Positions 92 to 50,864 of a stretch of DNA of 64,000 nucleotides are shown piece after piece (within the stretch, counting starts at the first letter, position 1; each line of letters starts with the position of its first letter). Both the position numbers and the translations under genes were made by a program. The stretch spans positions 7,812,001 through 7,876,000 of the forward strand of contig NC_135261.1 of the NCBI RefSeq assembly GCF_964204865.1, given 5' to 3'. The stretch comes from Styela clava (Eukaryota). The notes below the pieces were generated by a model. It had not been told where the DNA came from and ran no database searches. It worked only from the letters and a program-made list of their open reading frames with translations.

Positions 92-1726
92 CATTATGCT
101 ACGCTGGAATTGCTTCTGGAAAAATTACGGCCTCATCAACTCATGGATCCTGCCAGCTGAAAAACGTTCATATCAATTCCGGCGGTGCTTGGTGTGCAGG
201 AACAAGTGAGTGTCATTGTGTTATTCTTCATTTTATTCGTACTCCTTCTTCACCCTTCCTATTGCTTGTTTATACTTGTTTTTTTGCCCCATTTTCTTAC
301 TTACACCTCACATATATTCAGCACATTTCCTTTTTTTGCCACTACACAGTTGTCTTCCTTACTCAGTAATATTTGAACTCTGGTGTCTTTCTTATTGTAT
401 TGGAATTGTACATATGGATCGTTTTATTATTATGTTGTTGTTGTTCTTGTTGGTATTTTTTTCTTCTTATTGTTATGAGAAAATTGCTTCGAAATATTCA
501 GAGGTCGAAGATTGAATTTTTTGCTAGAAGGCTATTACTTCTGTTTATTTCAAAAAATTTCTGTGAAATTGATGTTATTTGTCTACTGTGATAGATTGCA
601 TCGTACTACCTTGTTTTGGTCTTAGTGTCCATATATTTGAGCATCGCACTCATGGTTTTTTTTTTCTACTTCTCTCAGGCTTCAATGTGATTTTTAGTTT
701 GTAACTTAATTAGGTCTCTCTTCTAATTCGTCTTGTTGTATAACTTCTGTACTCACGACTCTTCATAACAAAATATTTGAAATACTATACTTTTATATAT
801 TATTCTATATTATATTGCTATTCAGATGACGCAAACCAATGGGTTCAGGTTGATCTGAAAAGTCCAAAGCAAATTACTGGCATAGCAACGCGAGGAAGGT
901 TTGATTGTTGCCCCCAATGGATAAAAACGTACAAAGTTTCATATGGAAATAGCGTGAGCAATCTCACAATATACGAAGAAAATGGATCACCGAAGGTTAA
1001 ATTTGTCAATGTTTTGCACATGTTTCAATGAACAAAACATAACATCATAAAAGTGCTTTAAATTACAGTAACGCAATCATCAAGGTATCACATGTATTTT
1101 TCACACAGTATTTTTTGGAATCAGCAAAATGACATTTTATTTGTCGTTTTATAGTAAAGACATGAATTCCTTCTTTGTGAAGTAAATAAAAAGCTTACAC
1201 GTTCCTGTATCTGATTAGTATTATAAAATGTCAATGGAGAGGACTTTGAAAATACTATAAAATAAACGGCGCTCCAGAAGTATGTGTACCAATATGGAGG
1301 CAACTAATTTTGTTCGCCTACGTTATATCAAGTTGTTTAAAAGAACTGGAACCTATGGGCAGGGGGTATATTCACTTGGCTAACACAGACAGTCCCCGAA
1401 CTCGTAATAGAACTAAAATACAGAAAATCGAAATAAAATCATAGCCTAACCATAACCTGGTACACATACTACGGGACTACCAAATAAAAAGCTGTAGCAA
1501 TAAATAAGATGTGGAAAATATTGGTAAGAATTTATTAATAAAATCTGTCCTAAATCAATAATGTTTTCATTTTTGTATCAATTTTCAGATATTCTCCGGA
1601 AATTCCGACAAGAACACGATCGTGAAAAGATACTTCCGCGAATCCATCACTGCGCGATACTTTAGAATTCATCCTCTTGCATTCAATGATTGGAGAAGTA
1701 TGCGCATAGAGTTGTTAGATTGCTGA
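92..1726 (+). CDS. Discoidin/FA58C (F5/8 type C) domain protein, copy 1; 3' part only (exons 92-205, 826-995, 1589-1726)
   Basis: GT-AG exons join in phase: LCYAGIASGKITASSTHGSC...GAWCAGT / NDANQWVQVDLKSPKQITGIATRGRFDCCPQWIKTYKVSY / IFSGNSDKNTIVKRYFRESITARYFRIHP...SMRIELLDC*. These are canonical FA58C motifs. The 5' exons lie outside the window. Confidence 0.9.
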
Positions 1727-5174: not shown

Positions 5175-7494
5175 CTCAAACTACGGAACAATCTTGTGGA
5201 TCATGCGGTGGGAAATATTTTGAATTCACTATCGAGGTAAGTAAAACTAAAATAAATAAGCATCCGATGTATGTCAACATGTGTCAAAAATATTTGAATT
5301 TTTTACTGTAAAACTGTTTACTCAGCTTGTATGGTAGAGAAATATCTATTTCTTACATTTATTTCTAATAATACGTCACAATACATTTTGTATTGTCGAT
5401 TTGAGAATCCTGAACAGTCGTCCTATATTTTCAGATAAAAATTTATTACTTCATACGTTTGTTGAAATAATAATTCAATATAATTTATTTATTGTGATAT
5501 TTTTATTTTTCAGTCTACAAATTTGAAAGGTGGGCAAAGTCTATTTTTTCACATCAATATTGTTAGCTTTTATTTCATCATTTATCGATTTTTATTCAGA
5601 TAATTTTGCTTTCGTTGTGATTGAATAATTTACAAGATTATGAAAAAAATATAACAGTCCATACATTATTTCATCAACGTTACTCATTAGCGTTCTTCAA
5701 TCAAATATCACTTCTACTGCATGTTGCGTGTCACCCAGTAATTAATGGAATCACGTCACAAAAAAATTTAATTACTGTATTATGATGATATATATATTTC
5801 AGCATATAGTGTATTATTAGGTATGATATAATATATGTGTGCATAGTTCAGATTTTATAGAGTAAAAGTTATGAAATATTGTATTTTCTGTCTAATTTAT
5901 TCAATGTATGAACTTCACGAATTGATTGATCTAATTTAGAGAGAACATATTTTGAAAAATAAACATATGACAAACTTTTATAAAATATACATATAATAAG
6001 ATATTGAAATTTGTCGTTTTTCAGCCTAATGTAAATTGCATAACGTGTAATTGTCTTATTCTGAAATGCGGACAGTTTGATTTTCAATTTAATCCACTCT
6101 TTATTGTATTTAAAATCTCAACGTTTAATCAAATTATTTTTAGATCTGGAAAAAGAATTAAGAAATAGAATCACCTCTATCTTGAATGAAGATTTTGACA
6201 CTGAAAACGTGGAAATAAAGGCAGAGCTTATTCGTAATGATCACAATAGAGTTAAGTTACCCCCACTGACCACTCCCACAATCAAAGGAAGCGCTAATAA
6301 TGCTGCTACCAGCAAAGCTAAGGCTATTTCCACGGCTGTTGCTCTGACTTCGTCAACCACAAATTTGGCGACGACTGGAAGACCGAGTAAGTCTTAATTT
6401 TTGGTATGAAACAAAATTTTTTTCAAGACTTATTAGGATGAGTTCGGAAACTATTACTTTTATTTATTCCAATTCTTTGGCCTCCCTGTTCTCATTTTAT
6501 TTGGTTTTCGTGTTCGTATATTTAAGCATCGTCTTTGTATTTTCTTTTATATTCAGCTTGCTACGCTGGAATTGCATCTGGAGAAATTCCCATATCAAGC
6601 ATTACGGCATCATCTTTTCATCAAGACTGCTGGGTAACAAACGCTCCTCTCAACTCATCGGTAGCTTGGTGCGCAGGACACAGTGAGTGCTCTATTTTTT
6701 ATATTTAACACCTCAATTGATTTTTTTACATTTGTCCATATTTATTTATAGAAATATTTTGAATCTCTATAATATTTTTTTAGGCACGCCGAACAACCCA
6801 ACTGACTGGCTGCAGGTTGATTTGGAAACTCCAACGAAAATTACGGGCATAGCAACGCAAGGAAGATTCAATTGTTGCCACCAATTTGTAAGAACTTACA
6901 AAATTTCGTATGGAAATGATGCCACGGAACTTCGTATGTATGAAGAGAATGGGACTGTCAAGGTACATAATTATATTACATTATTTGATTTTTGGAAATA
7001 CATCAACGCTTGTTTCATACAGACTTGTGTGGAACAAATAATAGATAGTAAGGCGTAGATTGTAGTAGGCAATGAAGGCATGTTTCATGCAAAAATACGT
7101 GGATGGAAAGAGAATAATAAAAAAATTTCGAAAGTTTACAAATGCAGATAACCAAAATAAAACGGGCAAGATCTAATTTAACGAATATTTCTATTTTTGA
7201 TTATTTTCACGCCACCCTTTGTGGGGAGCGCCACCTTTTGTGAACCACTGTATGTATTGGTTTAAAAACTTGAAAACTTCTTATAAAGAGCTCTCATTAT
7301 TATCAGCATTGAAATAACATTTTATGATAATAAATTTAATAAATTCCTTATTTTAGATTTTCCCGGGGAATTCGGACAAAAACACAATCGTAAAAAACTA
7401 CTTCCTGAAACCTATCATTGCAATATATTTCAGAATTTACCCAGTTACTTACAATGAATGGATGAGCATGCGAATTGAACTTTTGAAATGCTAA
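5175..7494 (+). CDS. Discoidin/FA58C domain protein, copy 2: CxxC + coiled coil + Thr/Ala stalk + FA58C (exons 5175-5236, 5514-5529, 6144-6386, 6557-6682, 6784-6962, 7357-7494; first exon not located)
   Basis: Exon phases are consistent throughout. FA58C motifs: CYAGIASG, WCAG, DWLQVDL, GIATQGR, FPGNSD, YFRIYP, SMRIELLKC*. Intron positions match copy 1. Confidence 0.88.
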
Positions 7495-11599: not shown

Positions 11600-12268
11600 C
11601 AGGGGTGGCCAACCTGCTTTCGATCATCTATTTAAGATGTATTCAAATAGTACAATTCGGATCTACAGTCTGTCTAATTTTTAGTCGTAAATCGTAAAAA
11701 CTTGTATTAGTATTTATGCCTTATTTAAACAGCAAAAAATATATATTTTCAAACTATAAATGTTACATGACTGATCAAACTTCAGTGTCTAATTTACAAT
11801 TTCCTCCGAGTCCAATTCTTCGCTCGCTCGGAATTAGAAAAAATTTTGCATTCTGATGTCACTGCTGCCGTTGCGAGTAGAAATTAATTTTAAAATTAAA
11901 CAAACTACTCTTGGAGTAAGACAATAACTTTCACATACTGCAAAAGTTATTGTAGGATTGTTTGTCAGTCAAGACACACAATATTCGGCACGTTCATTCC
12001 TGCCAGAACCTTGGCATCAGCGAAGTTTGTATTTGTTACGCACAATAATATGCTCTATCTCGGACTTTCCCAGACTCAAATAGTGTATGTGTATATCGTA
12101 TTTTGCGCATGTACAGTACTGTATTCTTCCTGTTTAAAAACACACAACAGGCGCTGCATGAAACTGGTTCAAGGCAACTTTTTGGGGAATAATATTAAAT
12201 TCAAATTAACCCAACCCAACATTAGACGCGATCGACTACTCGAGATCAAGACGTGACGACCACCCCTG
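11600..12268. mobile_element. Non-autonomous hAT-type element
   Basis: Ends CAGGGGTGGCC ... GACCACCCCTG with CGATC subterminal motifs. TSD not preserved. Confidence 0.6.
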
Positions 12269-13021
12269 TATACATGTATTGCATAGCATGTAATTCCATT
12301 GCAGTTTGATGCAATCAAGTACAACAATATACGAAATCAGAATACACATTTGTCATAAAAATATTTTTACGTTTTCCTTGGGATGATCTTTTCGAAGTTG
12401 AAGGCTAAATTGGTCTCAATTCAAAGTGGGATATTATTTTTAGGCTATGATAGTCGATAAGACGTTTTGAACAAATGACCCCCAATTTTGGATCTTACGT
12501 AACTTTCAAAAACATATATTTAAGCGTCTTATTATTATTTTATTACAATAAAATATGGTATAATAGTATTTACATCATTTTAATTTTTCAACTTTGATTT
12601 TTATTATTTTTTAACTCGTTTTTTTTATGAAAAAAATGGTAGAAGTGGAGAAACATGTTACCGAGACTTAATCATCTAAACTTTTCGATGGGAAAGGTGA
12701 CATCTAGAGCAGAAGCACTAGACTATGCGTGCTGCAAGTTAATATTACAAATCTATATTATGCAAAAATGTATTTATTATATATTATATCCTGAACGATA
12801 TTAAGTCTGAATGGATATAAATATTTTTGTGATTACGTCTGATAAATGATATATATAAAATTAAAATGAGGAATTAAAATCATATTTGACTCACAATAAT
12901 CAATTACAAAGAAAAGGGTATCAAGCATATTTTATTCTTTATTCTGTTGCAAACACTCTGCTTAGAAATTGAAAATTTTGACTATAAACAGATTCGTACA
13001 AATCTTTTTAACGATAAATTT

Positions 13022-15998
13022 TTAATTTTTCTTTTTGTCAACCACAGAGTAAACATCGCCTCCTGTTACCGCACTGGTGGTTTTATCGGAGTTGTTCTTC
13101 TTGTTTTTCTTATCGACAACTGTGTATAAATCCCCCTCGCCAGGTTGTGCGTCTGTATTTCCATCGTACAATATATTTTCTGTTATATTCGTTTCACTTA
13201 CATCTTTTTTTGGTCCTTTCTTGTCTACAATGGTATAAAGTTCAATGTCGCCGACTCTTTCGGGTTCAGAATTTGCTTCGTATAAAACATTTTCCTTGAT
13301 TTGACTTTTTGTTTTTGTTTTCTTGACAACAGTGTACAGCTCGCCGGTTTCTTCTGCTTCTACGTGCATCACAGATTCTTTGCTATCCTTGTCAATATCT
13401 GCACGCCTTCTAGAACGTTTAGTGATATAAATGAACTTAAAACACAAGTTTTACTATTCACGTACCATTACCAACACTCGAAAAGCAAAATAAAAAATAA
13501 TGTTACTCGTAATATATGACGGGGATTATTAAAATTAATTAGAAGTAGGAATTATGAGCAAAAATTCAATTTAACCCAAAATCAGGAGCACAATTAACAC
13601 TAATTTTATTTCATAAACGGTAAAGATTTATATTAGATCTGGAACAATAACTATAGTTAAATTTAACTGGTTTAACTATCATGCATTATAAAAACACAAA
13701 TTGAATTATTAAAGTTTATATTTCCTACCTCTTCTGACATAAAATTTTGAAGTACTTTTATCAATCTTCAAAAGCACAAAAGTTAAGATATTTTCGCAAT
13801 ATTACTCCAATCAATTGTATTCACTTATTATAATTTTACGTCGTTTACAAACATTCCGCCCTTCTTGTAGATAGGTAAAGCCAAATATTTTCATGTTTCA
13901 CCCGCATGTAATGATTGGAATATTATAATACTAATAAATACTTACTTCCTGCATAATAAAACAACAAGCAAGATGATCAACAGAAGGCAAACAAGACCGG
14001 TTATTCCTCCAATTATTGCTATTTCCTTTGTTCCTAACACTTTTCTGTCGTTGATGGTCGTTGTATCTAACATAAAATTTGTCTCAGTTGCCATTTGTGT
14101 AGTAGATTTTGAGGTTGTTTCTAATAAGCACAAAAAATAGTGCTGAAAACCAGAAAACTCGCGGTTCCAGGTTCCAAACCTAGCCCAGCTTTTACCGAAG
14201 GCACAATCGCTCAAAAACAACGTGGACGTAAATTGAATCATTAAAAGCAATCGAATTATTCTCAAGGGTGACCGTACATTTGAACCCATGTACATTTGAA
14301 CCCATGCGTATATCCACGGGTTCAATCTATATGCGGGTGCTAAAACCCATGGGTTAGGGTTAGTATGGGTTTAACTATCCGTGAAACAAAAAACATTCCA
14401 TAGGTGCAATAGCATACAGGTGCAATTGTCATGGGTTCAAATGTACGTGGGTTCAAATGTAATGGAACCATCCTTAAGTTGTGGTAATATATTAGACTGG
14501 TATAGTTATTCTTATTTAAGGCGGGAGTGACCATCGTTGAAATAATGTTGGATGTTGTTAATGAATTTTTCTCCTACGACACCATATAAAAACATAAAGA
14601 AATATGCATATACAACAATTTTTACGCTTTTACTCTTTTCTTATTTGTATTTCTATTACTAACCTTTATTAGTAGTGATGATTGTTGTAGTTGGAAGGGA
14701 TGTTGTTTGAGCATCTAAAAGGTTTGAATAGTACTGTATACTTCGGAATTTTTTTATGGTGAGTCTTCATATTTGAATCGAAGCACCAGCATAACAAATA
14801 ATTCTAATATTACCCATATATTGAAAACGCACTAAGAAGACTGAGCCATGCAGTATTATTTCCAGGTTTATTAATCTGAGTTTAGATAACCAGTCAAATG
14901 ACCAAATGGACATGGATAGTGAAGGGAGTAATATTGGTAATGTGGAAAGCACGATTACGTCCATAAAATTTATACTTTAGACGCACTTGTAAATCAATGG
15001 CACCATGAAGGTCGATTTACTTTGATTTAATTCAAGCATACAATAATATTGGGTCCATTGTAAATTAACTCACCGGTAATGCAAGATATTGAAACGTTGG
15101 CAACGTTGACATGATGGGACGAATCAATGGAGCAGTTTGGACAAAATCTGCCGCCAAGATAATTACACATCCGAGTTTGATTTTCTCGTGATACAGTAGC
15201 GTTTAGCAAATCTGAAACACAGCAATGGGAATTTGAATTCAAGGTTATCCAATAAATTGACTTCAGACAGAAAACGTTATGTCACATTCTATTCGTTGTA
15301 TTGTAGAATATTATACTTCATAGTCCACGTAACTCACACAGCACACAATGCCCAAACTAGATGCAAAAATGAAAACTATCAAAATAGTATCAAATTTAAA
15401 CGGCCTGATATCTTATAAAAACATGCAATCCTTGAAAATTTTCGAAAAACACAGAGACAAAACATTATATTGTATAAAGTCAATTTCAAATTAAGTTCAA
15501 AATTCCGGCCAAATCTACTACAAATCCCAACTACCATGAACACGCAATATTACGCCACGGTATAACAACTAATGAATTAACTACTTCCCAGCAAAATCCT
15601 AACTTAATATTAAGTGAATTTACGAGTTCCGATTCAAATCACCTGTCATATCAATGTTCGCTTTGCACAAAAGATCAGTTGCATTAGTTAGATTGTAAAC
15701 AGCGGCTTGCAATTTCATGTTCTCGACAACCGAAAAACTGCAGTTGAAAAGAACTTCTAAAGGAGGCGACATTGTAGCTACATTACTGTCTGAGTCATCC
15801 TTTACATCAGGTTCTTTAGGCTGTTTTTTACTCCCACATGCAGTTGAATCTTAATAACAAGTCGGAATAACAGACATTTCAGAAAAATTGTACAACTGTT
15901 CAAAACTTTAAATAGTGTCAATCGATAAATAAAAAAATCTTACTTTGAATAAGAACTTGAAAGAAGATCAGCATCAAAAATATTCGGGAATTCATCAT
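13022..15998 (-). CDS. Orphan type I membrane receptor with tyrosine-motif repeat tail (exons 15944-15998, 15643-15849, 15074-15211, 14664-14714, 13946-14120, 13022-13409)
   Basis: Signal peptide MMNSRIFLMLIFFQVLIQ; Cys- and N-glycan-rich ectodomain; Thr-rich stalk; TM IAIIGGITGLVCLLLIILLVVLLC followed by RKRR; tail with 6 Tyr motifs. All splice phases are compatible. Extra small exons are possible. Confidence 0.82.
14267..14469. mobile_element. Foldback MITE (Mutator-like) in an intron
   Basis: TIRs built of TACATTTGAACCC repeats, a central GGGTTAGGGTTAG, and an imperfect 9-bp TSD attctcaag/atccttaag. Confidence 0.65.
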
Positions 15999-16352
15999 TA
16001 TGCTTAAAATGGCACTTATAAGTGCAACTAAAACATAAATTAAAAAGTTGATCAACATTGAAAAGCTGAATACACACATTCAAATACTATTTTAGCTAGC
16101 TTTTCGTGTAACGATGTGCAATTTCAATTTTTGTTTTCTCTTCACCTCTATTAGATTTCACAAATAAATAAGGATGAACTTTTAATAAAGATTCTAAATT
16201 AGTCATTTTATCTGACTTTCCTTGTAAAGATGTGCAATCTGAAGTGAATTTTAGTTCCGGTTAGTTCTTTATAAGATTTTAAAATGGATAACGATACACA
16301 TCTATTTATAAAGAATTCTAATGATTCGCCGCCACTCCAAGACTCAAATTTG

Positions 16353-16588: not shown

Positions 16589-19066
16589 CAAATTTGAGCA
16601 AACCGATTTTTACACGCTTGTTTATTTTTATGTATAGTTCTATAACTTATACCACAACAAACAAAGCTTGAGCAAGGATTGGACCAGAAGCATAGAACAA
16701 TGACAGGTATAGCAAGTTCGCTCAAATTAAAACTAAATCCAAACCATTATGTTCTCAAGTTTTTCTTTGTCAAATAAGTCAAAGTTGTTTATTTAAAACT
16801 ATTTTAATGTCTTTATCAAAACTCTATTATCAAATTATCAAATGTTGTATTCCCTATTTACAAATACTGTCAAATGTAATGTCGACCAGGCGCATGCATG
16901 TTTAGAATTTTTGACCATCTGTGTGAATATCGATAAAACTAAAATATAGATAAACTTTGTGATAATACAAATAGCGGCAACATTTTCATAAGTGGGCTTG
17001 TCATGTGTTTAATCCAATATCTTCCCTCCAATATAACTAACTATTTTTGTTTTGCATAGTACGCACTATGTTGTGCTAGCATAAAATCCCATTAATTCTC
17101 TTTGTAGTGTTATGATAATAGTATCAAATTCATGTTTCGATCACGGAATAAACTTATCTGACACTTCACAGACTGTGTTATGGCTTGGGTTGACAATGGC
17201 AAAATGGGAGAATCGAAATTAAACAAACTAACAAGATTTTCTAACTCGCAACCTTTCCTTGCTAAATTTTCACTTTGGCGGTTGTTAGCTTATTACAGCG
17301 AGTTTACTTGATTGAAATTGTATTGAAAGTAAATCTGAGACACTTTGCTGCTGTAGTCAGTTCACTAATATTCGTTTGCCAACAACATATTCTTCAGAAT
17401 AAGCACGCTGTTTATTGTAACATTAGATAGTATAATTTCCGTCGAGATCCTAATTTGCACTGGCCTTCCGCAATGCTTTATACTGAACTGCTCTATTTTC
17501 GCAAGCATTTCTCAATTTATTGAAGACGTTTAATGAGTCAGTTGCTTCGACCTGCAGGTACACCGAATGCGTATGTTCATACGTGGTGAGTGATACTGCC
17601 TGTGATACACTACAATGAGTAATTGAAATACAGTCAATTTTAGGTCATATCGGTTATTTTTCCAAGAAGCACAGGGACTCAATTTCCCCATAAATGTGTG
17701 TAGGAGACGCCGAAATAATCAAAAACCTTTCTAGTGCCTGGATAAATATTTTCTTTAAAAACTAAGTAGCAGTACAGTTACCAACGTTTTTCAAAGTGTT
17801 TGTCAAAATAACATAATCAAGTAAGATATTATATATTCTAATAATGTCTTACATTCTGCCTGTATATTGTCCTGTTCAGAGCGATACAATTAAGCGTTAA
17901 TTAAAGTTTCAACTTTTTCGTGAATTATTGTGAAAAAACGAATATTAACATTATGCTATTTTATATCGATGTTCTTCTAATATAGTCTATAGTCTATAGT
18001 TAATAATAAAATCTCTATATTAAACCGCCAATCATCGCAGAGAATAATAATCGGAAGTTTACACTGCACGTAAACCGCAAATGCCATACCGTCCCTGGCA
18101 TGATCAAGTCTGCACGCAATATTTATATCTTTTGAGTTATTGTAAACAAAAATTGGTATTAAAACTGTTTGATGAAAATTTTTTTTAAAACAGCCTTGTT
18201 TTTTTAATAAATTGATTTACTGCTCTATTATTTTTGAAAATTTTGTGTAAATTAAATCCAGTGCACGTTGATCATTATACTGATGACGATTATGATTAAT
18301 GCTCTCATAATATTATCTTCTTCAGCAGTGTTTCATTTTTGTGCTCGCGTAATTTTTTTAAACGTTCAGTAAACAATGGTTACCTTTATTCACTCGAAAT
18401 CAATTTGTTAACCTAACGTTGCCATCATTCAAGTAATATAAGCTACATGAATTTGAATCAGAACTATATTGACTAAGACAATACGACACGCTATTATCTG
18501 CAGGTATATAACTAGCTGATACCGAGAATTCTGCCTTGGACAACAGTGAAACATCTACCAAACTGCGATTATACAGTAACTGTAAACGTCGTGCAAAATT
18601 ACCATAAGTTCGTTGTATGATTTGTTTATCGGACTTCATCGACTTCCTCTTTTACTTCCGCAGTATTGGCTAATAGCATCAACAGTGAATTCAAATTCTA
18701 GCAACCGATCAAACACATTTTTCACTCGCACAGAATTCCATGCATATCTCGGCTGATTACTTCCTCGTTTTCGTGTTTCTGCTAACTATAACTTACAGTT
18801 GCGATCTACCAAAATCGGCGTTGAAAAAACATTCACTTTTTTGATGTGTAATTTGTCTTTAAGCATTTTGCAATCTCATCATTTGAAAAACATTTCGGAC
18901 AAAATAACTAAAAACATGTTATTATAGCAAAATGTATGTGCATGTATGAATGTAAAATTTCCTACTTTTTAAATTAGGTCCTGAATTAAGCAATGACTAC
19001 TATTTGCGATTCTGAAACTAAAGTTTGATTCCTACTCGATGGCTTAAATTCAATCCAAAATTGATT

Positions 19067-19436: not shown

Positions 19437-22069
19437 TCGTGAAAAATAACAATATTTGATCTTCGTCCTGGTGATGTGTCGAATTCTACGTTTGAAGTCT
19501 TCTGATACGAAATTGTCGTTCTTTTATATCTAAAGGCAAACAAAAAAATCCGATTCGTATCTTCGATACTTCTTCTAATTACTTATCGAACTCGATCGGT
19601 ATATATATATATGTTGATAGGTATTTGTCTGTTTGTTTCACTTCCGTATGTTACGCAATATCTCACGAAAGCGAGGTTAAATCATCTCCAAGTTTTGCAT
19701 GTGCATTCATCATATCTCGGACCAGAAGTCTTGATTGATTTTGGATGAATAACGTCCTGTATTTAATGAGTTATTAATTGATTAGTGATGGGACACGCGG
19801 TGTCGCTATTGAGTCAGAGCAAAAAAAAAAATCGAAACCGCAAGATCGATAAGTCGGCGGTCTCCAATCGCTATCTAGTTTCTATTTTTATGTGTATTTT
19901 ATATGCTCAGTGGCATGACGCGTCGTTCCAAGACTTAGGAATACGCTTCTCATCGCACCTCTGATGATACAAGCGTTCGAATTCCACGGAGGAGATAATA
20001 AACAGAGGATAGCTGAACTCCTATGGTCGGTTACGACTGTCACCACCATCAAACCAATGTATCTGAAATAAATAACCGGACGAGAGGCCGTGGTCCGCTA
20101 TATTATTGAGTCGTCCTCTAGGCTTTCCTCTCCCTCGGGATAGATATAAAAATCTTGTCTAATGTGAGATAGAAGATACAAAAATTGTGAGCAACATATA
20201 TATTAGAAAGTACAAAGTTGCCCGCGTGCTATTTTATTTCTTTCCATATCTAAGGTTCTAAATTCCATGATAATTAATGAAAATTACGAAAAAAGCAATT
20301 AGAGCATGAACCTCTAAAAGAGAGCTACTTCTAATCAAATCCTCAAATCCGGCATATAAGCATCTAGTTTCCTAATATACAGGAGAGAGTCATTAACCGG
20401 AAATGAATTTTATCGCGCTCAAATATTGAAATAAGATAAACACATTGTTTTCTCACCTACGTATCAGAAATATTAATAATATCATTCCTTCCAATCCAGC
20501 AACTACGGACAACACTATCATTGAAGTTAAATATAAGGTAGAATGATTATTGACTCCATGCAGCGTCCCCTCGGGTCCTGATCCAGTATTTTTGTTTGCC
20601 GCTTGAAATTTTGCCATTGCTCTCTCTGAAAAAAAAAAACAGCTGCCTTTTATTTTGAAATATACATAATAAAATCATATGTATAATAAACATGATGCCA
20701 TCCGCGGGTCGGGTGGTGCGACAGAAGCGTGCAAGATTGGTAGTTAATAAACAAAGCTTATGTCAAATGAGTTGGATCACCATTGAAGTTATGAAAAGCA
20801 TGAAAAATGAACAAGGTCGTCGGTACTCCCGTAGTATGTGTATCAGGTTAGGGTTAGGCCATAATTTTATTTCGATTACGAGTTCGGGGACTGTCTGTGT
20901 TAGCCAAGTGAATATATGGGTTCCAGTCCTTCCACACAACTTGATGTGAAGGGGAACACAATTAGTTATCTCTATATTGGTACACACACTTCTGGAAGGA
21001 CTGATCATCATATATAAGAAAAGCAATGCTCAAATATATGGACACGAGAGCCAAAAAAAAAGTAGTAAGAGTATGCCTAACCATCAGGTATCAACTTACG
21101 CAGAAGTGGAACCGCCACAAAGTGCGCAATTTTCAGTTGAGATGCTACAATATATTAGGTTTGAAATACATAATATCAATCTTATTCACCAATTTTATTA
21201 TAGTCTTCCACACATGGAACATATTCATACTCCAGTTTAAAATACCGTCCACCCATCCAATCAGCCAGTCCGTTTGGTGTAAACACAATTTCTAATGAAC
21301 TATCTTTATTTTCTTGGAATAATACAACTCTCTGTTTGCAGTTTATTGGTGTTTTGATTTGTTCAACATTTTGACAATGCAAGCCATTTTGCAGAACTAT
21401 CACACAAGTGCCCTCCGTAAAAATAGCCATATTTTCGCCTGTAAGAATATCATATGTGCCATTATCGAAGATGAACAAAAAATAAATAAAAAAAAACATT
21501 GTATCAGCAGTTATAGTAAAAATATATTAAGCTGATTCTGGATTTGATTTTAGTTTGATCCATAGAATTTTCAATTACTTATTATACCTGCAGAACCCAA
21601 TTTTAAATTCACTCGCGATAATTTACAAATATGCAACAGTGCGGAATTGATATGTTTTTAGTTTCAGGAAATTGAGCAAGGATGTATATGTACGGAAGAA
21701 AGTAGTCTGAATATTAATATTCCCAATAGGGCATCAAAAATAGCACACAGCTTCCAAATCATTCATAACCGAAATTCAGGTATTTCTACTTTCCAATCCC
21801 GCAAAGTGAATATTTCACTATATACCTACCCCCCACTACCAAGTTTCCGGTAAGGAACTTCCTGTTGAGTTTGTTAGCAGTTAATAATTCATTTTCTTTG
21901 ATACGAATAATCAGAGACGAATTCACTTCAGCTCCATGTGGTATGGCCCAATGCGAACAATCGTTTTCTGTGAACATATCTGGATATCTGGGAGATTTTA
22001 TTGTTCCATTTTGTGATCTTCTCGTTGTCACGGTAGGAACACATTCTGAACTCACATTTGTTGTATATG
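19415..22069 (-). CDS. CUB-like domain type I membrane protein with a short tail (exons ~21830-22069, 21190-21438, 20457-20625, 19415-19529; candidate first exon 22189-22286)
   Basis: CUB start C...NGTIKSPRYPD...C.HWAI and CUB end SSLEIVFT...FKLEY. TM LTSMIVLSVVAGLEGMILLIFLI followed by RRYKR. The end of the first CUB exon and the 5' exon are uncertain. Confidence 0.7.
19582..19878 (+). mobile_element. Non-autonomous Helitron/Helentron-like element
   Basis: 5' TA/TGTY microsatellite, an 'atatctc...aagttttgcatg' body typical of HINEs, and a GC-rich subterminal stretch followed by terminal CTAG-T. Confidence 0.5.
19905..20150 (+). mobile_element. SINE-like repeat (deleted copy)
   Basis: Shares CGCACCTCTGAT, TGGTCGGTTACG, AACCGGACGAGAGGCCGTGGT and a CCTCTCCCTCGGGATA tail with copies at 23120 and 56140. 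A-box-like GCTCAGTGG and B-box-like GTTCGAATTCC. Confidence 0.6.
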
Positions 22070-23119
22070 CTGTTTAAATGGAATTAAAAGCGTGTATGAA
22101 GATAAAATGTACATAACAATAAATTGATGATTACTTATTCTAAAATTAAATAAAAAAAATTACGAAGAAAAATAGTACAACTTTTTACTTTGAATACATT
22201 GGCGATCAAAAATTGCTGAATGCAGAAGAAAAATTTTTTTTCAAAATTTTGACTATTTTCGAAATTTCGATTTTTATATTTTTCATATATTTATTTTCCA
22301 GTTACAACAAAATATCATATAACATTCAATATGCGACGTGGCAACTGTGTACAATATTGTTCTAATCCTATAAATGAGACTACTCACCAAACATCCACAA
22401 TAATATTACCACAGTTTTCATAATAATATTCATCAATGTCAACACCTGATTTTGCAATCCTATTCAAACAGACTCAAGTACTGGTATGGCGGCAGTTTAG
22501 GAAGGTGGCATTTCTTTTCACCCGTAGACATCATATTTTTGCGTTTCATGTTTGATCATGCAAACACTGATATTATCAGCGGATCTATCAATTTAGTTGT
22601 GTTTTTATGCGTTGACTGACCCCATGCGTACAATATTCCCGGACTTTAAAAAAAAAGTAATGCTAATGACATTTAGCCGTAATTAGAATTTTTATTTGAC
22701 TCCTTTTTGTAAAACTGCGATTTACTGGCCTGGTTATCACGTTGCAACAAACTAAAATCCTACGGTTTTTTTACTCAAAATATTTTCTACCTTTAGGTGG
22801 CAATATATATATCTGTGCAAATATAAAGATGTGATAACGTTGAAAAGTTGGTAACTTTGTAATTTTGTTTATGTAGTTTCAATTTTTACTGGACACCATA
22901 GGGCAACCTATTCAAATTACTTACGGAAATTTTGCGGGTTAACAGGGGTCAGAGGATTTCCTAATTTTAAATAATTTCCGCTTGTAACGCGATAAAATTG
23001 GAAATAGGTCATGACGTGCGGTGAGTTTATTCCTATACGTAGGCAGGGCTCAAAACCGACGAACAGTAATTAGTATTAAATGACACATACATGTTTGTTT
23101 AAAAACATACAAAGTCATT

Positions 23120-47012: not shown

Positions 47013-50000
47013 TTATAAAAATCTAGTGGGTTTACGAGTTTTTCTACCAAATTTGGTTCTGTAATCATAACCGGTTGTAGGTTGATCGTCTGTAGAACGC
47101 TGATTGTTCGTTGTTGTTTTAGGGATTGGAGGACGTCCTCTTGGTTTAGGAATGGATACAGAAACAGGATGGTCGAGATCAAGATGAGCTGGCTTTAACC
47201 TGTCAACAGAAATAGTTTCGCTTCGGTTTCCAATCTGTACTTTGAAAGTTTTATTCCCATGTTGCAAAACTTCGAATGGTCCTTCATAAGGTCTTTGTAA
47301 AGGAGATCGGTGTGCGTCACGACGAATAAACACGAACTTGGCTTGATTGAGTGCGGCTGGCATTCTTGCTCTGAAAGGACCATGGTGCGACGTAGGAATT
47401 GGAGCCAATGATCCTACTCTTTCTCTGAGAAGCCGAAGATTTGTGGTCGGGCAGCTATTGTCTTTAGAGTCTGATATGAAATCACCGGGGACAGTGAGGG
47501 GAGCGCCATAAACAAGCTCAGCTGACGATGCCGTAAGATCTTCTTTCGGAGCTGTGCGGATTCCCAATAAAACCCATGGAAGCACGTCCAACCAGTTTGA
47601 ATCATTGAGTCGTGCCTTAATGGCAGATTTCATTGTTCGATGAAAACGTTCTACCAAACCATTTGCCTGTGGGTGGTAGGCTGTAGTGTGATGAATTTTT
47701 GTTCCCAATAATTCGGCAACAGCAGACCAAAGGCCTGAAATGAACTGTGATCCTCGGTCAGAAGAAATGTGAAGTGGAACACCAAAACGGGCAACCCAAT
47801 TTGACAGGAAAGCTCGGGCACAAGACATAGTTGATATGTCTTTGAGGGGAATGGCTTCTGGCCACCTTGTGAAACGATCTACTATTGTAAGAAGGTAATT
47901 GTATCCTTGTGATGGTGGTAAAGGACCAACTAAGTCAATGTTGATATGGTCAAAACGTTTGTCTGGCATTTTGAAATCTTCTAAAGGGGCCCGTATATGA
48001 CGATTTATTTTAGACTTTTGGCATTCCAGGCATGTTTTGGCCCATTGTCCAATTTGTTTGGAGAGACCATGCCACACAAATTTTTGTGAGATCAGTTTGC
48101 GAGTGGTACGTATGCCTGGATGCGAGAGCCCGTGAACCGCATCAAAAATTTTTCTGCGCCAGCTGGCAGGCACTATAGGTCGTGGTCTACCCGTAGATAC
48201 GTCACACAGCAATGTAAATTTGCCGTTGCAAAAAGGGATATCTTCGACCCGAAGACCGGTGATAGCAGTGCGGTAAGCCTGTGTATCCTTGTCGTTTAGT
48301 TGATCTGTGGCCATAATTTCATAATCGATGCCGTCATTGATGTCGTTGATGACCGCGCGCGACAGGGCGTCGGCGACAGTATTATCCTTACCGGAAATAT
48401 GTTTTATATCTGTTGTGTATTCAGATATGAAATTGAGGTGACGCTGTTGTCGCGCTGACCATGGCTCAGAGACTTTTGCCATAGCAAAAGTGAGGGGTTT
48501 GTGATCTGTAAAAACCGTGAAGGGTCGTGCTTCGAGAAAATAACGAAAATGTCGTATTCCTAAGTAAACGGCCAAAAGTTCCTTGTCGAATGCACTGTAT
48601 TTCGTCTCGGGTTTGCGTAGCTGTCTACTATAAAATGCAATTGGCTTCCAAGATCCATTTAACTTTTGCTCGAGAACACCTCCTAAGGCAACGTCCGAAG
48701 CGTCGACTGTGAGGGCAGTTGGTGCGTTTGGTTGTGGATGTGTAAGCATAACTGCATTTGCCAGTACTTTCTTAGTTTTTTCAAATGCACATATCATACT
48801 GTCAGTCCATTCGGGCAAAACCTTCGACTTCTTGGGCAGGCCGGAAAGTGCTGCGAATAGTGGTTGCATTATTTGGGCAGCTTTGGGCAAAAACCGATGA
48901 TAGAAATTAACCATGCCAAGAAACTCTTGAAGGCCTTTTACAGATGAAGGGCGAGGGAAATTAGTTATCGCCTTCACTTTATTGGGGAGAGGAAAAGCAC
49001 CCTCCTTTGTAACAGTATGTCCCAGGAACTCTAATTCGCTTAAACCGAATTTACATTTGGCAGGATTGATAACCATACCGTGACTTTTTAGCCTTTGGAA
49101 AAGATTTCGCAAGTCCTTTTTGTGTTGATCTTTAGACGTACTGGCGATAAGGATGTCGTCAAGATAGACAAATACGAAAGGCAAACCTCGACAGATGGTA
49201 TCCATTAAACGCTGGAATACCTGGGCGGCGTTTTTAAGCCCAAACGGCATGCGGAGGAATTCAAATAGGCCAAACGGTGTGATAATGGCAGTTTTGGGGA
49301 TATCTTGTTCATGAATAGGTATTTGATGATAACCGCGAACAAGATCCACTTTAGAGAAAATTGTCCTTCCCGCAAGACGGGCCGTAAAATCTTGTATGTT
49401 TGGGACTGGGTAGCGGTCAGGCACGGTCATATCATTGAGACGTCTGTAGTCTCCACATGGGCGCCACCCGCCGTCCTGTTTAGGTACGATGTGAAGCGCA
49501 GACGCCCAGGGGCTATTTGAGGGTCGGATGATTCCGAGTTCAATCATGTTATCAAACTCTGCCTTTGCCGCGGCTAGCTTATCGGGGTGCAATCTTCGAG
49601 CCTTTGCGTGCACCGGGGGGCCTTCTGTAACAATATGATGCTTTACCCCGTGTGCAGTGGTCGGGTTGCTGAATGTGGGGCGCGTTAAATCAGGAAATTC
49701 GTTCAGAATTTTGGCAAAATCGTTTTCGGCTACGTAGTGAAGGCAAGGCGGGGTGCCAGTAATGGTTCTGGTTGGAATACAAGCGTATGTGCTTGCCTCG
49801 ATAAGTCGTTTGCCCCTGATGTCAACCAAAAGTCCGTGAGAGCGCAAAAAATCTCCCCCGATAATTGCCCGTGAAACATTGGCTAATGTGAATTTCCAGG
49901 TAAAATTTCTACCGCATATAGTCAAAGGCACTTTTCGTGTGCCATATGTCGTAATTGAGGTGCCATTAGCTGCCAAAAGTGCTTGTCCTGGTCGCCCGTA

Positions 50001-50150
50001 ACGACGGTCATGACCGGTGGCAGGCAGCACGCTGACTTGTGCACCCGTATCAACTAAAAAACTGCGTCCAGAGTTTTTGTCTGTGACGTAATAAAGGTTT
50101 GAATCGCCGACCGCCAAAGAGGTTACTGACGGTCGGCTATGGCGTTTTCC
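47013..50150 (-). CDS. pol: Pol polyprotein (protease, RT, RNase H, integrase), probably expressed by -1 frameshift from gag
   Basis: LVDTGA, YLDD, TVDAS, HHCC zinc finger, IDLVGP / SDRG / VERFH catalytic DDE, GPF module and a PRGRP AT-hook. The ORF is uninterrupted. Confidence 0.96.
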
Positions 50151-50803
50151 GAAACCACAAAAGAACATGGCGGGCGACATTTTTTGGCTTTCTTGCCGAA
50201 TTTCCTGTGATAAAAACACATTTCAGACAAAACATGAGATGGTTGTTTTTTGCATGAACTGGTTTTTTGTACAGCGTTTGTCACCTCATAGCCTTTTGCA
50301 GTTAAAATATCATCTGCTTTCCTTGCCAGCTTCCGAAAATCGTCGCCCGTGGTTGTTAAAATGTCTGTAAGTTGAGACCGGACGTCTGGTGGCAGATGAC
50401 TGACGAACAAATGGCGAAATAAGAAATCAGGTGTCTTACCTACTGGATACAATGCAAGCATGTTGTCCATAAGTTCCGTTGCCGTTCCATCCCCTAGTCC
50501 AGGCATTGAACAAAGGCGCGCAGCTCGTTCAGGATCCGTTAGCGAACATTTAGTAGTGAGCTTCTCTTTGAGATCTTGGTACTTGTTCGTTTCCGGCGGG
50601 TTATTGAGAACATTAAGAATGCTGGCAGCGGTATTGTCATCCAGAGCGGCAACCACGTAGTGGTATTTTGTTTCATCTGTTGTGATATTTCGAACAGCGA
50701 ACTGCGCTTCGACTTGGTGGAACCAAACGGCAGGATTTTTAGTCCAGAAAATCGGCAGCTTTAATGATACCGCTGTTAGGCCTACTTTGTTGTCTTCACT
50801 CAT
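50123..50803 (-). CDS. gag: Gag protein
   Basis: KLPIFW...[10 protein letters not shown]-terminus and [18 protein letters not shown] (C-X2-H-X9-C-X3-C), typical of CsRn1/Boudicca/Kabuki. Confidence 0.95.
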
Positions 50804-50864
50804 ATTCTTCGTTATGTGCGTATTCTTTTCTCAAAAGTATGCTTTTGAGGTCGGGGTCACCATT

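What the first reader, a model, noticed from the sequence alone, without database searches (positions are those of the whole stretch)
13022..13409. Receptor tail built from alternating repeated phosphotyrosine motifs
Seen: one exon encodes ELYTVVKK, ENVLYE, ELYTIVDKK, ENILYD, DLYTVVDKK and DVYSVVDKK*. That is an internally repeated module with four acidic-Y-[TS]-[VI]-V sites and two NxLY sites. Established: acidic-flanked YxxV resembles Src-family substrate and SHP/Csk SH2-docking sites (ITIM/EPIYA-like, though position -2 is not the strict ITIM residue), and NxxY is a PTB (Dok/Shc) ligand as in CD200R. Inference: an orphan inhibitory or adaptor-type immune/recognition receptor that docks both SH2 and PTB proteins.
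Basis: partly seen in the sequence, partly recalled or inferred. Interest (0 to 1): 0.75.

Follow-up and report, generated by a model that had tools for sequence, protein, structure and literature searches.

The report
Sea-squirt receptor with repeated tyrosine-motif tail
An expressed but unstudied sea-squirt (Styela clava) membrane protein has a variable outer part and a conserved inner tail made of repeated tyrosine motifs, a signalling-type cassette that other receptor genes of this genome share and that resembles one left unexplained in the allorecognition receptors of its relative Botryllus.

Summary
Window 13022-13409 (minus strand) is the last exon of a six-exon Styela clava gene, RefSeq "uncharacterized protein LOC144411658". 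It encodes a signal peptide, a small glycosylated Cys-containing ectodomain, a Thr-rich stalk, a TM segment and a 128-aa tail.

- **Splicing:** spliced contigs from three studies join the TM exon to the tail exon exactly as predicted. The DNA run does not.
- **Motifs:** all six tail tyrosines sit in motifs, 4x [DE][LV]Y[TS][VI]V and 2x EN[VI]LY. None of 200,000 shuffles gave more than one.
- **Known motif classes:** none is an ITIM, ITSM, ITAM or hemITAM. The last, DVYSVV, fits the Botryllus FcoR "core-2" motif, whose function is unknown.
- **Shared cassette:** the pair (ΦYSVV[DN]K followed by [DE]N[VI]LY) recurs in a tandem family on contig C1 with an unrelated ectodomain. It also recurs, at motif level, in sponge p190RhoGAP-like proteins.
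- **Alleles:** two alleles differ at 18/69 residues in ectodomain exon 2, against 5/169 in TM plus tail. All six tyrosines are kept.

Docking of SH2 and PTB proteins is plausible but untested, and "inhibitory" is unsupported. No ortholog was found.

The scan had noted other Styela receptor clusters with tyrosine tails elsewhere in this genome (s1-812120, s1-815900), but not this gene.

The parts
15944..16079 (-). Exon 1: 5' coding exon with a hydrophobic signal peptide. Candidate ATGs are 16079 (used by RefSeq P0001), 16058 (position of the P0007 start) and 15998 (MMNSRIFLMLIFFQVLIQ). The donor lies after 15944.
   Evidence: translation; P0001; RNA-like contigs X2 and X6 cover 15944-16029 and 15944-16022. 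The start codon is not resolved by the contigs.
15643..15849 (-). Exon 2: N-terminal ectodomain, the most polymorphic part of the protein (phase 1-1).
   Evidence: joint 15211->15643; X2 and X6 contigs carry 17 other letters in 145 bases, with 68 letters unaligned; 18 of 69 residues differ between the alleles P0001 and P0007.
15074..15211 (-). Exon 3: second ectodomain exon with four Cys (phase 1-1).
   Evidence: 4 of 46 residues differ between the alleles.
14664..14714 (-). Exon 4: Thr-rich stalk (AQTTSLPTTTIITTNK).
   Evidence: joints to 14664 from 14120 or 14066; 0 of 17 differ.
13946..14120 (-). Exon 5: stalk end plus transmembrane segment (TM about 13951-14022, IAIIGGITGLVCLLLIILLVVLLC) and the start of the RKRR stop-transfer. 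An alternative acceptor at 14066 removes 18 stalk residues in frame.
   Evidence: phase; 14120->14664 in X1 and X2; 14066->14664 in X1 and X6. P0001 uses the short form and P0007 the long form. 0 of 41 residues differ.
13022..13409 (-). Exon 6: the 128-aa cytoplasmic tail plus the stop codon (13022-13024). This is the finding itself.
   Evidence: joint 13409->13946 in X1, X2 and X6, not in the DNA run X10.
13319..13342 (-). Motif ELYTVVKK (tail Y25).
13277..13294 (-). Motif ENVLYE (tail Y43), NxxY type.
13217..13243 (-). Motif ELYTIVDKK (tail Y58). It reads YAIV in allele P0007.
13163..13180 (-). Motif ENILYD (tail Y81). It reads GNILYD in allele P0007.
13106..13132 (-). Motif DLYTVVDKK (tail Y95).
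13031..13057 (-). Motif DVYSVVDKK (tail Y120). It fits the Botryllus core-2 [A/D]VYxxV exactly and lies at the C-terminal end.
13025..13036 (-). C-terminal KKKN. It fits the KKxx dilysine pattern; the meaning of that pattern is recalled, not tested.
12399..13021 (-). 3' UTR, at least this far.
   Evidence: X1 record 1 runs 12399-13409 and continues into the TM exon.

Best explanation
The exon is the cytoplasmic tail of an expressed, lineage-restricted type I membrane glycoprotein of Styela clava. I read the tail as a multivalent phosphotyrosine scaffold built from an old internal duplication of a roughly 40-aa bipartite cassette.

Shown:
- The gene model, the splicing and the topology features.
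- The motif repeats and their retention in two alleles.
- The sharing of the cassette with a tandem gene family that has an unrelated ectodomain.
- Ectodomain-biased allelic divergence.
- SH2, PID and IRS-type PTB genes in the genome.

Inferred:
- Clustering of the polymorphic ectodomain lets a Src-family kinase phosphorylate the six tyrosines. Each has an acidic residue within -2 to -4 and an aliphatic residue at -1.
- The four pY-[TS]-[VI]-V sites then dock SH2 proteins of the Csk, SHP or SHIP preference class.
- The two E-N-[VI]-L-pY sites dock Dok/IRS/Shc-type PTB proteins.
- The tail thereby assembles a complex near the kinase.

The sign of the signal is open. I lean slightly to feedback or inhibitory, by analogy with PAG-Csk and CD200R-Dok. 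The Botryllus data associate the related core-2 motif with an activating partner.
For: - **Gene and splicing:** all introns are GT-AG with consistent phases. Spliced contigs in X1, X2 and X6 from three studies carry every junction; DNA run X10 carries none. RefSeq models P0001 and P0007 agree.
- **Topology:** there is an N-terminal hydrophobic leader and 8 N-glycosylation sequons plus 7 Cys before the TM. RKRR follows the TM, and the tail has no Cys.
- **Non-random motifs:** 6 of 6 tyrosines lie in motifs, against at most one motif in any of 200,000 shuffles. Motif codons differ at synonymous sites and the linkers have diverged.
- **Conservation beyond Y and +3:** positions -2, -1, +1, +2, +4 and +5 are also kept. 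That is more than a YxxΦ sorting signal needs.
- **Shared cassette:** the strict motif pattern hits the genome 9 times, against 2 for the control. Six of the hits lie in a tandem cluster on contig C1, whose tails read ...NIE[DA]MYSVVNKNAKTSKNAESE.EMVDNVLYNM*.
- **Cassette homology:** window tail aa 44-82 aligns with the C1 tail aa 68-105 at 39% identity, pairwise E 3e-4. The ectodomains show no similarity, E 1.8.
- **Another C-terminal copy:** a further receptor-like tail, L066, ends ...DDIYSVVSK*.
- **Cytosolic occurrence:** the only non-self HMMER hit below E 1e-5 among 1.84 billion representatives is P0002, at E 7.8e-8. It belongs to sponge p190RhoGAP-like proteins. 14 of its 16 family members carry 3-11 ΦYS[VI][VI] motifs plus NP[LI]Y. 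A cytosolic protein cannot be using these as endocytic signals.
- **Alleles:** all six tyrosines are kept. 5 of 169 TM plus tail residues differ, against 22 of 115 in ectodomain exons 2-3; Fisher p 6.5e-6.
- **Literature:**
  - The Csk SH2 site of Cbp/PAG is YSSV (PMC3492796, passages).
  - The Dok1 PTB domain binds phosphorylated NxxY in integrin and RET peptides (PMC4479986, passages).
  - Botryllus FcoR tails carry core-1 Yxx[ILV] and C-terminal paired core-2 [A/D]VYxxV (PMC12582321, section 13).
  - Botryllus expresses Src, Syk, SHP-1 and SHIP homologs (PMC12582321, passages).
- **Readers exist in S. clava:** 50 SH2, 9 PID and 7 IRS-PTB exon-level matches.
Against: - There is no evidence that any of these tyrosines is phosphorylated or binds anything.
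- 0 of 6 fit ITIM, ITSM, ITAM, hemITAM, NPxY, YxN, YxxM or YxxP.
- The four YxxV sites equally fit YxxΦ sorting signals and acidic-flanked LIR cores. NxxY is also a sorting-type motif: the start of the PMC8007030 abstract says NPxY motifs are mostly known for trafficking. The C-terminus KKKN fits KKxx.
- No ortholog was found, so conservation rests on two alleles and on paralogous cassettes within one species.
- One C1 copy (L026) has lost the second tyrosine. Only 5 of 11 near-full C1 tail exons keep both motifs in one open frame.
- The sponge resemblance is at motif level and may be convergent. No P0002 homolog was found in S. clava with that query.
- The relaxed motif pattern is not enriched genome-wide: 82 hits against 113 for the control.
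- The tool only guesses that the runs are RNA. They are contigs, so tissue, expression level and strand are unknown.
- The Csk and Dok consensus preferences and the Src substrate preference are partly recalled, not retrieved.
Confidence: 0.5

Rival explanations
1. The tyrosines work unphosphorylated, as sorting signals. On this reading the four YxxV sites are YxxΦ signals for AP complexes. The two NxxY sites are ligands for endocytic PTB adaptors (Dab2, ARH or Numb type), and KKKN-COOH is a COPI retrieval signal. The protein would then be a constitutively cycling or endocytic cargo receptor rather than a signalling receptor.
For: All four YxxV sites fit Yxx[ILV], both NxxY sites are present, and KKxx lies at the C-terminus. 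The start of the PMC8007030 abstract states that NPxY motifs are mostly known for trafficking. PID-type PTB genes are present.
Against: Conservation extends well beyond Y and +3, to acidic -2, aliphatic -1, S/T at +1, V/I at +2 and [DNK]K at +4/+5. Four to six copies is unusual for sorting signals. The same motif pair is repeated in a cytosolic sponge RhoGAP region, where sorting signals make no sense. The C1 family tails end in NVLYNM with no KKxx, so KKKN may simply be the end of the DKK unit. That YxxΦ prefers bulkier residues than V is recalled.
Confidence: 0.2
2. An ER-resident membrane protein whose acidic-flanked Y-x-x-V cores are Atg8/LC3-interacting regions, as in a multi-LIR ER-phagy receptor, held in the ER by KKKN.
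For: Four acidic-flanked Yxx[V] cores and a C-terminal KKxx. Both the LIR and the KKxx definitions are recalled.
Against: A heavily N-glycosylated, allelically hypervariable ectodomain suggests surface exposure and ligand contact. The NxLY partner motif has no role in this model. The homologous C1 tails lack KKxx. Tyr is the least common LIR aromatic (recalled).
Confidence: 0.05
3. A young, fast-evolving gene whose tail repeats persist through duplication history and composition without a specific tyrosine-based function.
For: No ortholog or Pfam domain was found. There is a partial, frameshifted copy on contig C19. Many C1 copies are broken.
Against: Synonymous divergence of the motif codons, together with peptide conservation and diverged linkers, argues for selection on the motifs. 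The tail is far more conserved between alleles than the ectodomain. The gene is spliced and expressed in runs from three studies.
Confidence: 0.1

Closest known systems
Botryllus schlosseri fester co-receptors (FcoR), 'core-1' Yxx[ILV] and 'core-2' [A/D]VYxxV tail motifs (PMC12582321; section 13 read in full, other parts as passages)
   Same: Both come from the same ascidian family, Styelidae (the family placement is recalled). Both are type I membrane proteins with long tails holding two or more tyrosine motifs. The window tail has 4 core-1 matches and 1 exact core-2 match (DVYSVV), placed at the C-terminal end as described for core-2. In both, ectodomain-biased polymorphism and alternative splicing just before the TM occur.
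   Different: FcoR ectodomains have three Ig-like domains plus a sushi domain and the proteins are 520-610 aa. This protein is about 340 aa and has no detectable Ig or sushi domain. Core-2 is described only in pairs 29-33 residues apart, whereas here the last two tyrosines are 25 apart and the -1 residue is L in three of four sites. The NxLY partner motif is not mentioned in that paper: 0 occurrences each of NPxY, PTB and Dok. Direct tail comparison was not possible, because the FcoR tails are in the SI figures.
Cbp/PAG1-type transmembrane adaptors (Csk docking at pYSSV) and CD200R-Dok (PTB docking at NPLY)
   Same: Y-[ST]-x-V resembles the Csk SH2 site YSSV of Cbp (PMC3492796, passages). NxxY resembles the Dok PTB ligands (PMC4479986, passages). 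Both are multi-tyrosine tails, and a Cys sits at the membrane-cytosol border.
   Different: There is no sequence homology. Adaptors of this type have very short ectodomains (recalled), whereas this one has about 150 residues, is glycosylated and is polymorphic. The NxxY sites here lack Pro at -2. Nothing has been tested biochemically.
Tandem receptor family at S. clava contig C1:27.61-27.94 Mb
   Same: It has the same bipartite cassette in the same order: acidic-Φ-Y-S-V-V-N-K, then about 17 residues, then D-N-V-L-Y. The pairwise alignment gives 39% identity, E 3e-4. In both, the tail is encoded in one terminal exon after a TM exon.
   Different: The ectodomains are unrelated. The C1 tails have one cassette, against two plus two extra YxxV sites here, and a long QQENE-rich spacer. 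Many copies are broken.
Middle region of sponge p190RhoGAP-like proteins (e.g. XP_065903412.1, Dysidea avara)
   Same: 14 of 16 family members have 3-11 copies of [DE..]ΦYS[VI][VI] followed mostly by [DNQ]K, plus 1-2 NP[LI]Y towards the C-end. This family gave the best non-self HMMER hit, P0002 at E 7.8e-8.
   Different: It is a cytosolic multidomain GAP from a different phylum. The similarity is confined to the motifs, so convergence is as likely as common descent. It was not found in S. clava with that query.

Membership tests
ITIM-bearing inhibitory receptors | [I/L/V/S]xYxx[I/L/V] in the cytoplasmic tail | tested here: not met
   0 of 6 tyrosines fit. Position -2 is E, E, D, D at the YxxV sites, and +3 is N at the NxLY sites.
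ITSM / ITAM / hemITAM receptors | TxYxx[VI]; Yxx[LI]x6-12Yxx[LI]; [ED][ED][ED]xYxxL (the last as defined in PMC12582321, section 13) | tested here: not met
   0 matches for each pattern.
Botryllus FcoR family | Ectodomain of Ig-like domains plus a sushi domain | tested here: not met
   Pfam finds no Ig or sushi domain on any ectodomain exon; the best hits are below cut-off and unrelated. PDB sequence search found nothing at E <= 0.5.
Botryllus FcoR family | Tail with core-1 Yxx[ILV] and/or core-2 [A/D]VYxxV | tested here: met
   4 core-1 matches and 1 exact core-2 match, DVYSVV at the C-terminal end.
Botryllus FcoR family | Core-2 occurs in pairs 29-33 residues apart at the C-terminal end | tested here: inconclusive
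   The last two YxxV tyrosines are 25 apart, and the penultimate site is DLYTVV (L, not V, at -1). The other spacings are 33 and 37. How the paper counts the separation is not stated in the text I read.
Botryllus FcoR family | Encoded next to, and co-expressed with, a fester-family (three-TM) partner | not tested
   The upstream neighbour, at 20456-22073 on the minus strand, has a weak CUB match (E 0.029, below cut-off) and one TM exon. No fester-like gene was looked for.
NPxY / NxxY PTB-ligand motifs | N at -3 of Tyr (NxxY); Pro at -2 for canonical NPxY | tested here: inconclusive
   NxxY is met 2 of 2 (NVLY, NILY). NPxY is met 0 of 2. Binding was not tested.
Transmembrane adaptor proteins (LAT/PAG type) | Very short ectodomain, juxtamembrane palmitoylation Cys, multi-Tyr tail (definition recalled) | tested here: not met
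   The ectodomain plus stalk is about 150 aa with 8 sequons. One juxtamembrane Cys and six tail Tyr are present.
KKxx ER-retrieval cargo | Lys at -3 and -4 from the C-terminus of a type I membrane protein (definition recalled) | tested here: met
   The C-terminus is KKKN in both alleles. Whether it functions is not testable with these tools.

The most novel reading that the evidence does not exclude
The pair [DE]-Φ-Y-[ST]-V-V-[DN]-K followed 15-25 residues later by [DE]-N-[VI]-L-Y is a discrete, exon-portable immunoreceptor signalling cassette of styelid tunicates. It is the full form of the 'core-2' motif left unexplained in the Botryllus allorecognition co-receptors. It would work by co-recruiting a PTB adaptor (Dok-like) and an SH2 enzyme (Csk, SHP or SHIP-like), giving an ITIM-independent control pathway in animals that lack LAT and SLP-76. 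The window gene would be a polymorphic recognition receptor carrying a duplicated version of the cassette in a solitary, non-fusing ascidian.
Probability: 0.2. Interest if true: 0.8.

Novelty: new variant of a known kind. Interest (0 to 1): 0.55.

Why it matters
[quoted passage not shown] The Botryllus allorecognition work (PMC12582321) found that most co-receptors carry tyrosine "core" motifs whose function is unknown.

This Styela gene shows the same kind of motif in a simpler, duplicated and clearly delimited form. The motif is paired with a second motif (NxLY) that the Botryllus text I read does not mention. The pair is shared with a tandem receptor family that has an unrelated ectodomain.

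That turns an unexplained motif into a defined cassette of about 40 residues. It can be tested directly with phosphopeptide pull-downs. It can also be searched for in other ascidians, to ask how receptor signalling was wired before ITAM adaptors such as LAT.

The ectodomain-biased allelic divergence also makes the gene a candidate polymorphic recognition receptor in a solitary species.

Tried and rejected
- **Pfam** on each exon separately gave only sub-threshold, unrelated hits (Nitrophorin, Ariadne, YnfU, Syndecan). I rejected them.
- **PDB sequence search** with P0001 gave only Rab-3C at E 0.53. Rejected.
- **Own-genome search with the tail exon** found only itself, so there is no close paralogous tail.
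- **Own-genome searches with ectodomain exons 2 and 3** found one extra copy on C19. BLAST showed it to be a partial copy, exons 1-3 only, with frame changes and a Cys-to-Trp change. It has no TM or tail exon within the 20 kb fetched. I read it as a pseudogene fragment, not a second receptor.
- **HMMER hits P0003-P0005** are internally repetitive proteins with no tyrosine motif. Rejected as compositional.
- **P0002 search in S. clava** gave no match.
- **Relaxed motif pattern** gave 82 hits against 113 for the control, which is background. Of the 23 new loci from that call plus four stretches I fetched at other hits, only L066 looked like a receptor tail, and L072 possibly. The three C14 hits (ELYSIVDK) sit at the start of open frames with no receptor features. 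I set them aside.
- **Motif strings in papers** (YSVVNK, IYSVV, LYSVV, YSVVDK) gave 4 irrelevant papers. Searches for Styela with ITIM or immunoreceptor terms gave only reviews, so I found nothing in print on this gene or cassette in that library.
- **Ectodomain comparisons:** the C1 ectodomain compared with the window gene and with the neighbouring CUB-like exon showed no similarity.
- **Irrelevant call:** the bacterial promoter/terminator scan does not apply to a eukaryotic gene and is not used.
- **Neighbour's tail exon:** I looked for it at 18403-18651 but could not place an acceptor. I make no claim about it.
- **Earlier findings by sequence** were blank.
- **Not seen:** the supplements of PMC12582321 (SI Figs S13-S15, FcoR tail alignments) were not opened, because the session states that they are closed. 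They could show whether FcoR tails also hold an NxLY site.
- **Joined model:** Searches of my model were done exon by exon. Full-length comparisons used the database proteins P0001 and P0007, returned.


Full report
**What is there.** The finding lies on the minus strand. Window 13025-13408 is an open frame of 128 codons followed by a stop at 13022-13024. It reads RRADIDKDSKES...GELYTVVKK...ENVLYE...ELYTIVDKK...ENILYD...DLYTVVDKK...DVYSVVDKKKN*. The only slip is the end, which is KKKN*, not KK*.

All six tyrosines of the tail sit in the two motif types. I shuffled the tail's own residues 200,000 times. 83 shuffles had at least one [DE][LV]Y[ST][VI]V, 103 had at least one N[VI]LY[DE], and none had more than one motif in total. 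The real tail has six.

The first bipartite unit aligns with the second at 39% identity, pairwise E 1e-7. Tandem Repeats Finder sees no DNA repeat, and the motif codons differ at synonymous positions. This is an old internal duplication in which the motifs were kept and the linkers drifted.

**Gene model and expression.** Upstream on the same strand I found five more exons with GT-AG borders and consistent phases:
- a signal-peptide exon with its donor after 15944
- two ectodomain exons, 15849-15643 and 15211-15074
- a Thr-rich stalk exon, 14714-14664
- a TM exon, 14120-13946
- the tail exon, from 13409

The TM exon ends ...LLCRK, and the junction gives ...CRK-RRAD.

One run search listed 13 holders from four studies. 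Nine are small contig sets that the tool guesses to be RNA. I laid three of these (X1, X2, X6; three studies) and one large, presumably genomic run (X10) on 12200-16200.
- All three small runs have a contig that joins 13409 to 13946, with GT..AG on the minus strand. X10 does not, and it covers the introns.
- The other junctions are also seen. 15211 joins 15643 in X2 and X6, about 14714 joins 15074 in X2 and X6, and exon 2 joins exon 1 in X2 and X6.
- Two alternative acceptors are seen for the TM exon, 14120 (X1, X2) and 14066 (X1, X6). The second removes 18 stalk residues in frame.

The exon is spliced to it.

These are contigs, so they show presence and structure only. They give no level, strand or tissue. 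That the runs are RNA is the tool's guess, which the intron-less contigs support.

**Identity.** A HMMER search of the tail exon against 1.84 billion representatives returned one strong hit, P0001 (E 2.5e-72, 100% identity). The cluster table names it XP_077974697.1, [quoted passage not shown]. Its 346 residues match my exon model with the short acceptor and an upstream ATG.

Full-length work used this database protein.

A word-based search with P0001 found only one further protein, P0007. It is S. clava LOC120330115 isoform X1, 359 aa. No Pfam family reaches its cut-off on any exon, and no solved structure is related by sequence.

As far as these searches reach, the protein is restricted to this species. 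The ectodomain was searched only with the word-based tool, not with HMMER.

**Topology.** P0001 has a hydrophobic leader. Before the TM segment it has eight N-x-[ST] sequons and seven Cys. It then has a Thr-rich stalk, a 24-residue hydrophobic segment, and RKRR. The tail has no Cys. This is a type I membrane glycoprotein with the tyrosine tail in the cytoplasm.

**Alleles.** P0007 is the same gene from another assembly. TM and tail are nearly identical, and the RNA-like contigs of X2 and X6 carry the same tail variant (V to G at tail residue 114). The differences are very uneven.

| Region | Residues that differ |
|---|---|
| Exon 2 (ectodomain) | 18 of 69 |
| Exon 3 (ectodomain) | 4 of 46 |
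| Stalk | 0 of 17 |
| TM exon | 0 of 41 |
| Tail | 5 of 128 |

Ectodomain against TM plus tail gives Fisher p 6.5e-6. All six tyrosines are kept. Two of the five tail changes touch a motif without removing its tyrosine (YTIV to YAIV, ENILY to GNILY).

This is the pattern of a receptor whose outside is under diversifying or relaxed pressure and whose inside is constrained. It rests on two alleles only.

Contig C19 holds a partial copy of exons 1-3, with introns, at 77-89% nucleotide identity. It has frame changes, and it is closer to the P0007-type allele than to the window allele. I read it as a pseudogene fragment.

**What the motifs are not.** None of the six tyrosines fits any of these patterns:
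- ITIM ([ILVS]xYxx[ILV])
- ITSM
- ITAM
- hemITAM
- NPxY
- YxN, YxxM or YxxP

"ITIM-like" should therefore not be read as membership.

**What they resemble.** The four Y-[TS]-[VI]-V sites fit the Botryllus "core-1" (Yxx[ILV]). The last one, DVYSVV, fits "core-2" ([A/D]VYxxV) exactly and lies at the C-terminal end.

The PNAS 2025 paper on Botryllus fester co-receptors is PMC12582321. I read section 13 in full and other parts as passages. It states that core-2 motifs occur only in pairs 29-33 residues apart at the C-terminal end, and that their function is unknown. It also says that the dual core-2 receptor FcoR1 pairs with the activating receptor uncle fester, and that monomorphic FcoRs never carry ITIMs.

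Here the YxxV tyrosines are 33, 37 and 25 residues apart.

[quoted passage not shown] This protein has neither domain by sequence, so it is not an FcoR. It does share that family's tail vocabulary. The paper's text does not mention NPxY, PTB or Dok (0 occurrences each).

**The cassette is shared.** A degenerate DNA pattern for [DE]xY[ST]VV[DN]K hit the S. clava genome nine times, against two for the reversed control. Two hits are in the window tail. Six lie in a tandem cluster on contig C1.

Their terminal exons read ...NIE[DA]MYSVVNKNAKTSKNAESE.EMVDNVLYNM*. That is the same two motifs, in the same order, at a similar distance.

A protein search with one such exon found 11 near-full-length copies plus fragments, all within C1:27.61-27.94 Mb.
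- Five of the 11 keep both motifs in one open frame.
- One (L026) has YSVIN and has lost the second tyrosine (NALHNM).
- The rest have stops or frame changes.

The window's second unit aligns with the C1 tail across both motifs at 39% identity, pairwise E 3e-4. The ectodomain exons of the two families show no similarity, E 1.8. In C1 the tail exon follows a TM exon. So a cassette of about 40 residues sits on unrelated ectodomains.

A relaxed pattern was at background, 82 hits against 113 for the control. Among its hits, one further receptor-like tail (L066; a TM exon, then 259 aa) ends in ...DDIYSVVSK*.

The scan's earlier notes describe other S. clava receptor clusters with alternative tyrosine tails (s1-812120, s1-815900). 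I could not establish whether the C1 cluster is one of them (one search was blank).

**A distant echo.** The best non-self HMMER hit, P0002 (E 7.8e-8), belongs to a family of 16 unnamed proteins. One cluster member is XP_065903412.1, "rho GTPase-activating protein 5-like" of the sponge Dysidea avara. The matching part is the region between the pG1/pG2 and RhoGAP domains.

15 of the 16 family members carry 3-11 copies of ΦYS[VI][VI], mostly followed by [DNQ]K. 14 of those 15 also carry one or two NP[LI]Y near the C-end. P0022 has a single copy and no NxxY, and P0019 has five copies and two NPLY.

This is motif-level similarity and may be convergent. No homolog was found in S. clava with that query. 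Still, it shows the same motif pair repeated in a cytosolic signalling protein, where endocytic sorting cannot be its role.

**Mechanism.** I commit to the following at a confidence of about one half. The tail is a multivalent phosphotyrosine scaffold.
- **Shown:** the anatomy, the splicing, the conservation pattern and the cassette sharing described above.
- **From papers:**
  - The Csk SH2 site of Cbp/PAG is YSSV (PMC3492796, passages).
  - The Dok1 PTB domain binds phosphorylated NxxY in integrin β tails and a RET peptide (PMC4479986, passages).
  - Botryllus expresses Src, Syk, SHP-1 and SHIP homologs and lacks LAT and SLP-76 (PMC12582321, passages).
- **Recalled, not retrieved:**
  - the Src-family preference for acidic residues upstream and an aliphatic residue at -1
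  - the Csk SH2 preference pY-[TAS]-x-[MIV]
  - a Dok PTB preference for N-x-L-pY
  - the NKLY site of RET
- **Inferred:** clustering leads to phosphorylation of all six sites. SH2 proteins dock at pY-[TS]-[VI]-V and PTB adaptors at E-N-[VI]-L-pY. Repetition gives avidity.

The sign of the signal is open. PAG-Csk and CD200R-Dok suggest negative feedback. The Botryllus association of core-2 with an activating partner suggests the opposite.

**Rivals.**
- **Sorting signals (about 0.2).** The same residues fit unphosphorylated sorting signals: YxxΦ, NxxY, and KKxx at the C-terminus. The start of the PMC8007030 abstract, which is all I saw of that paper, notes that NPxY motifs are mostly trafficking signals. 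Three things argue against this reading. Conservation extends over positions -2 to +5, the copy number is high, and the motif pair occurs in a cytosolic sponge protein. The homologous C1 tails also lack KKxx.
- **Multi-LIR ER protein (about 0.05).** This fits the acidic-flanked YxxV cores plus KKxx. It does not fit the polymorphic glycosylated ectodomain or the NxLY partner.
- **No specific function (about 0.1).** Selection on the motifs and expression in runs from three studies argue against it.

The functional inference is plausible and now better framed, but untested. "Inhibitory" is unsupported.

The gene is annotated but uncharacterised. My paper searches found nothing on it or on the motif strings.

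I class it as a new variant of a known kind. It is a tunicate type I receptor with non-ITIM "core" tyrosine motifs. It has a novel small ectodomain and a duplicated bipartite cassette whose NxLY half is, as far as I could see, undescribed.

Noticed in passing
G000:C1:27.61-27.94 Mb (loci L009-L014, L018-L039): A tandem cluster of small type I receptor-like genes. Their terminal exons end ...MYSVVNK...DNVLYNM*. There are 11 near-full tail exons plus fragments, and 5 keep both motifs in one frame. In L018 an adjacent gene has a related ectodomain exon but a different Tyr-rich tail (HGIYENN, SGYELP, SSVYEPT, ...YHDIEY*), which suggests paired genes with alternative tails.
   Followed up: partly
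G000:C19:93951-95535 (L007 5951-7535): A partial copy of exons 1-3 and their introns of the window gene, at 77-89% nucleotide identity. It has frame changes in exons 2 and 3 and a Cys-to-Trp change, and no TM or tail exon within the 20 kb fetched. It is closer to the P0007 allele type than to the window allele, so it could be a source or relic of the allelic lineages.
   Followed up: partly
window 14210-14477: A high-copy repeat inside intron 4. Summed contig depth there is thousands of times that of its flanks in all four runs, with many loose ends. It is probably a short interspersed or MITE-like element.
   Followed up: no
window 20456-22073 (minus strand): The upstream neighbour gene has two exons with a weak CUB match (Pfam E 0.029, below cut-off). 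Its TM exon has a Glu inside the hydrophobic segment (...VVAGLEGMILLIFLIRR) and ends at a GT donor. I could not locate its tail exon.
   Followed up: partly
G000:C3:19879106-19879882 (L066 748-1524): Another receptor-like gene: a TM exon followed by a 259-aa tail exon. The tail holds MNPALY, NHQYATISL and NFNPYSVA and ends in ...DDIYSVVSK*.
   Followed up: no
proteins P0002, P0008-P0022, P0033: Sponge p190RhoGAP-like proteins carry 3-11 ΦYSVV[DNQ]K repeats plus NPLYQ[ST] between the pG1/pG2 and RhoGAP domains. This is a conserved multi-tyrosine array that I did not find described under those motif strings.
   Followed up: partly
window 744-1028 and 6687-7055 (plus strand): Open frames with F5/8 type C (discoidin)-like sequence (...WVQVDLKSPKQITGIATRGRFDCCPQWIKTYKVSYG...). 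Recognised by eye only.
   Followed up: no
window 47016-50830 (minus strand): A long open frame of 1069 aa plus an upstream 235-aa frame. It looks like a retrotransposon gag-pol. A reverse-transcriptase-like frame also lies at 62608-63908. Judged by eye only.
   Followed up: no
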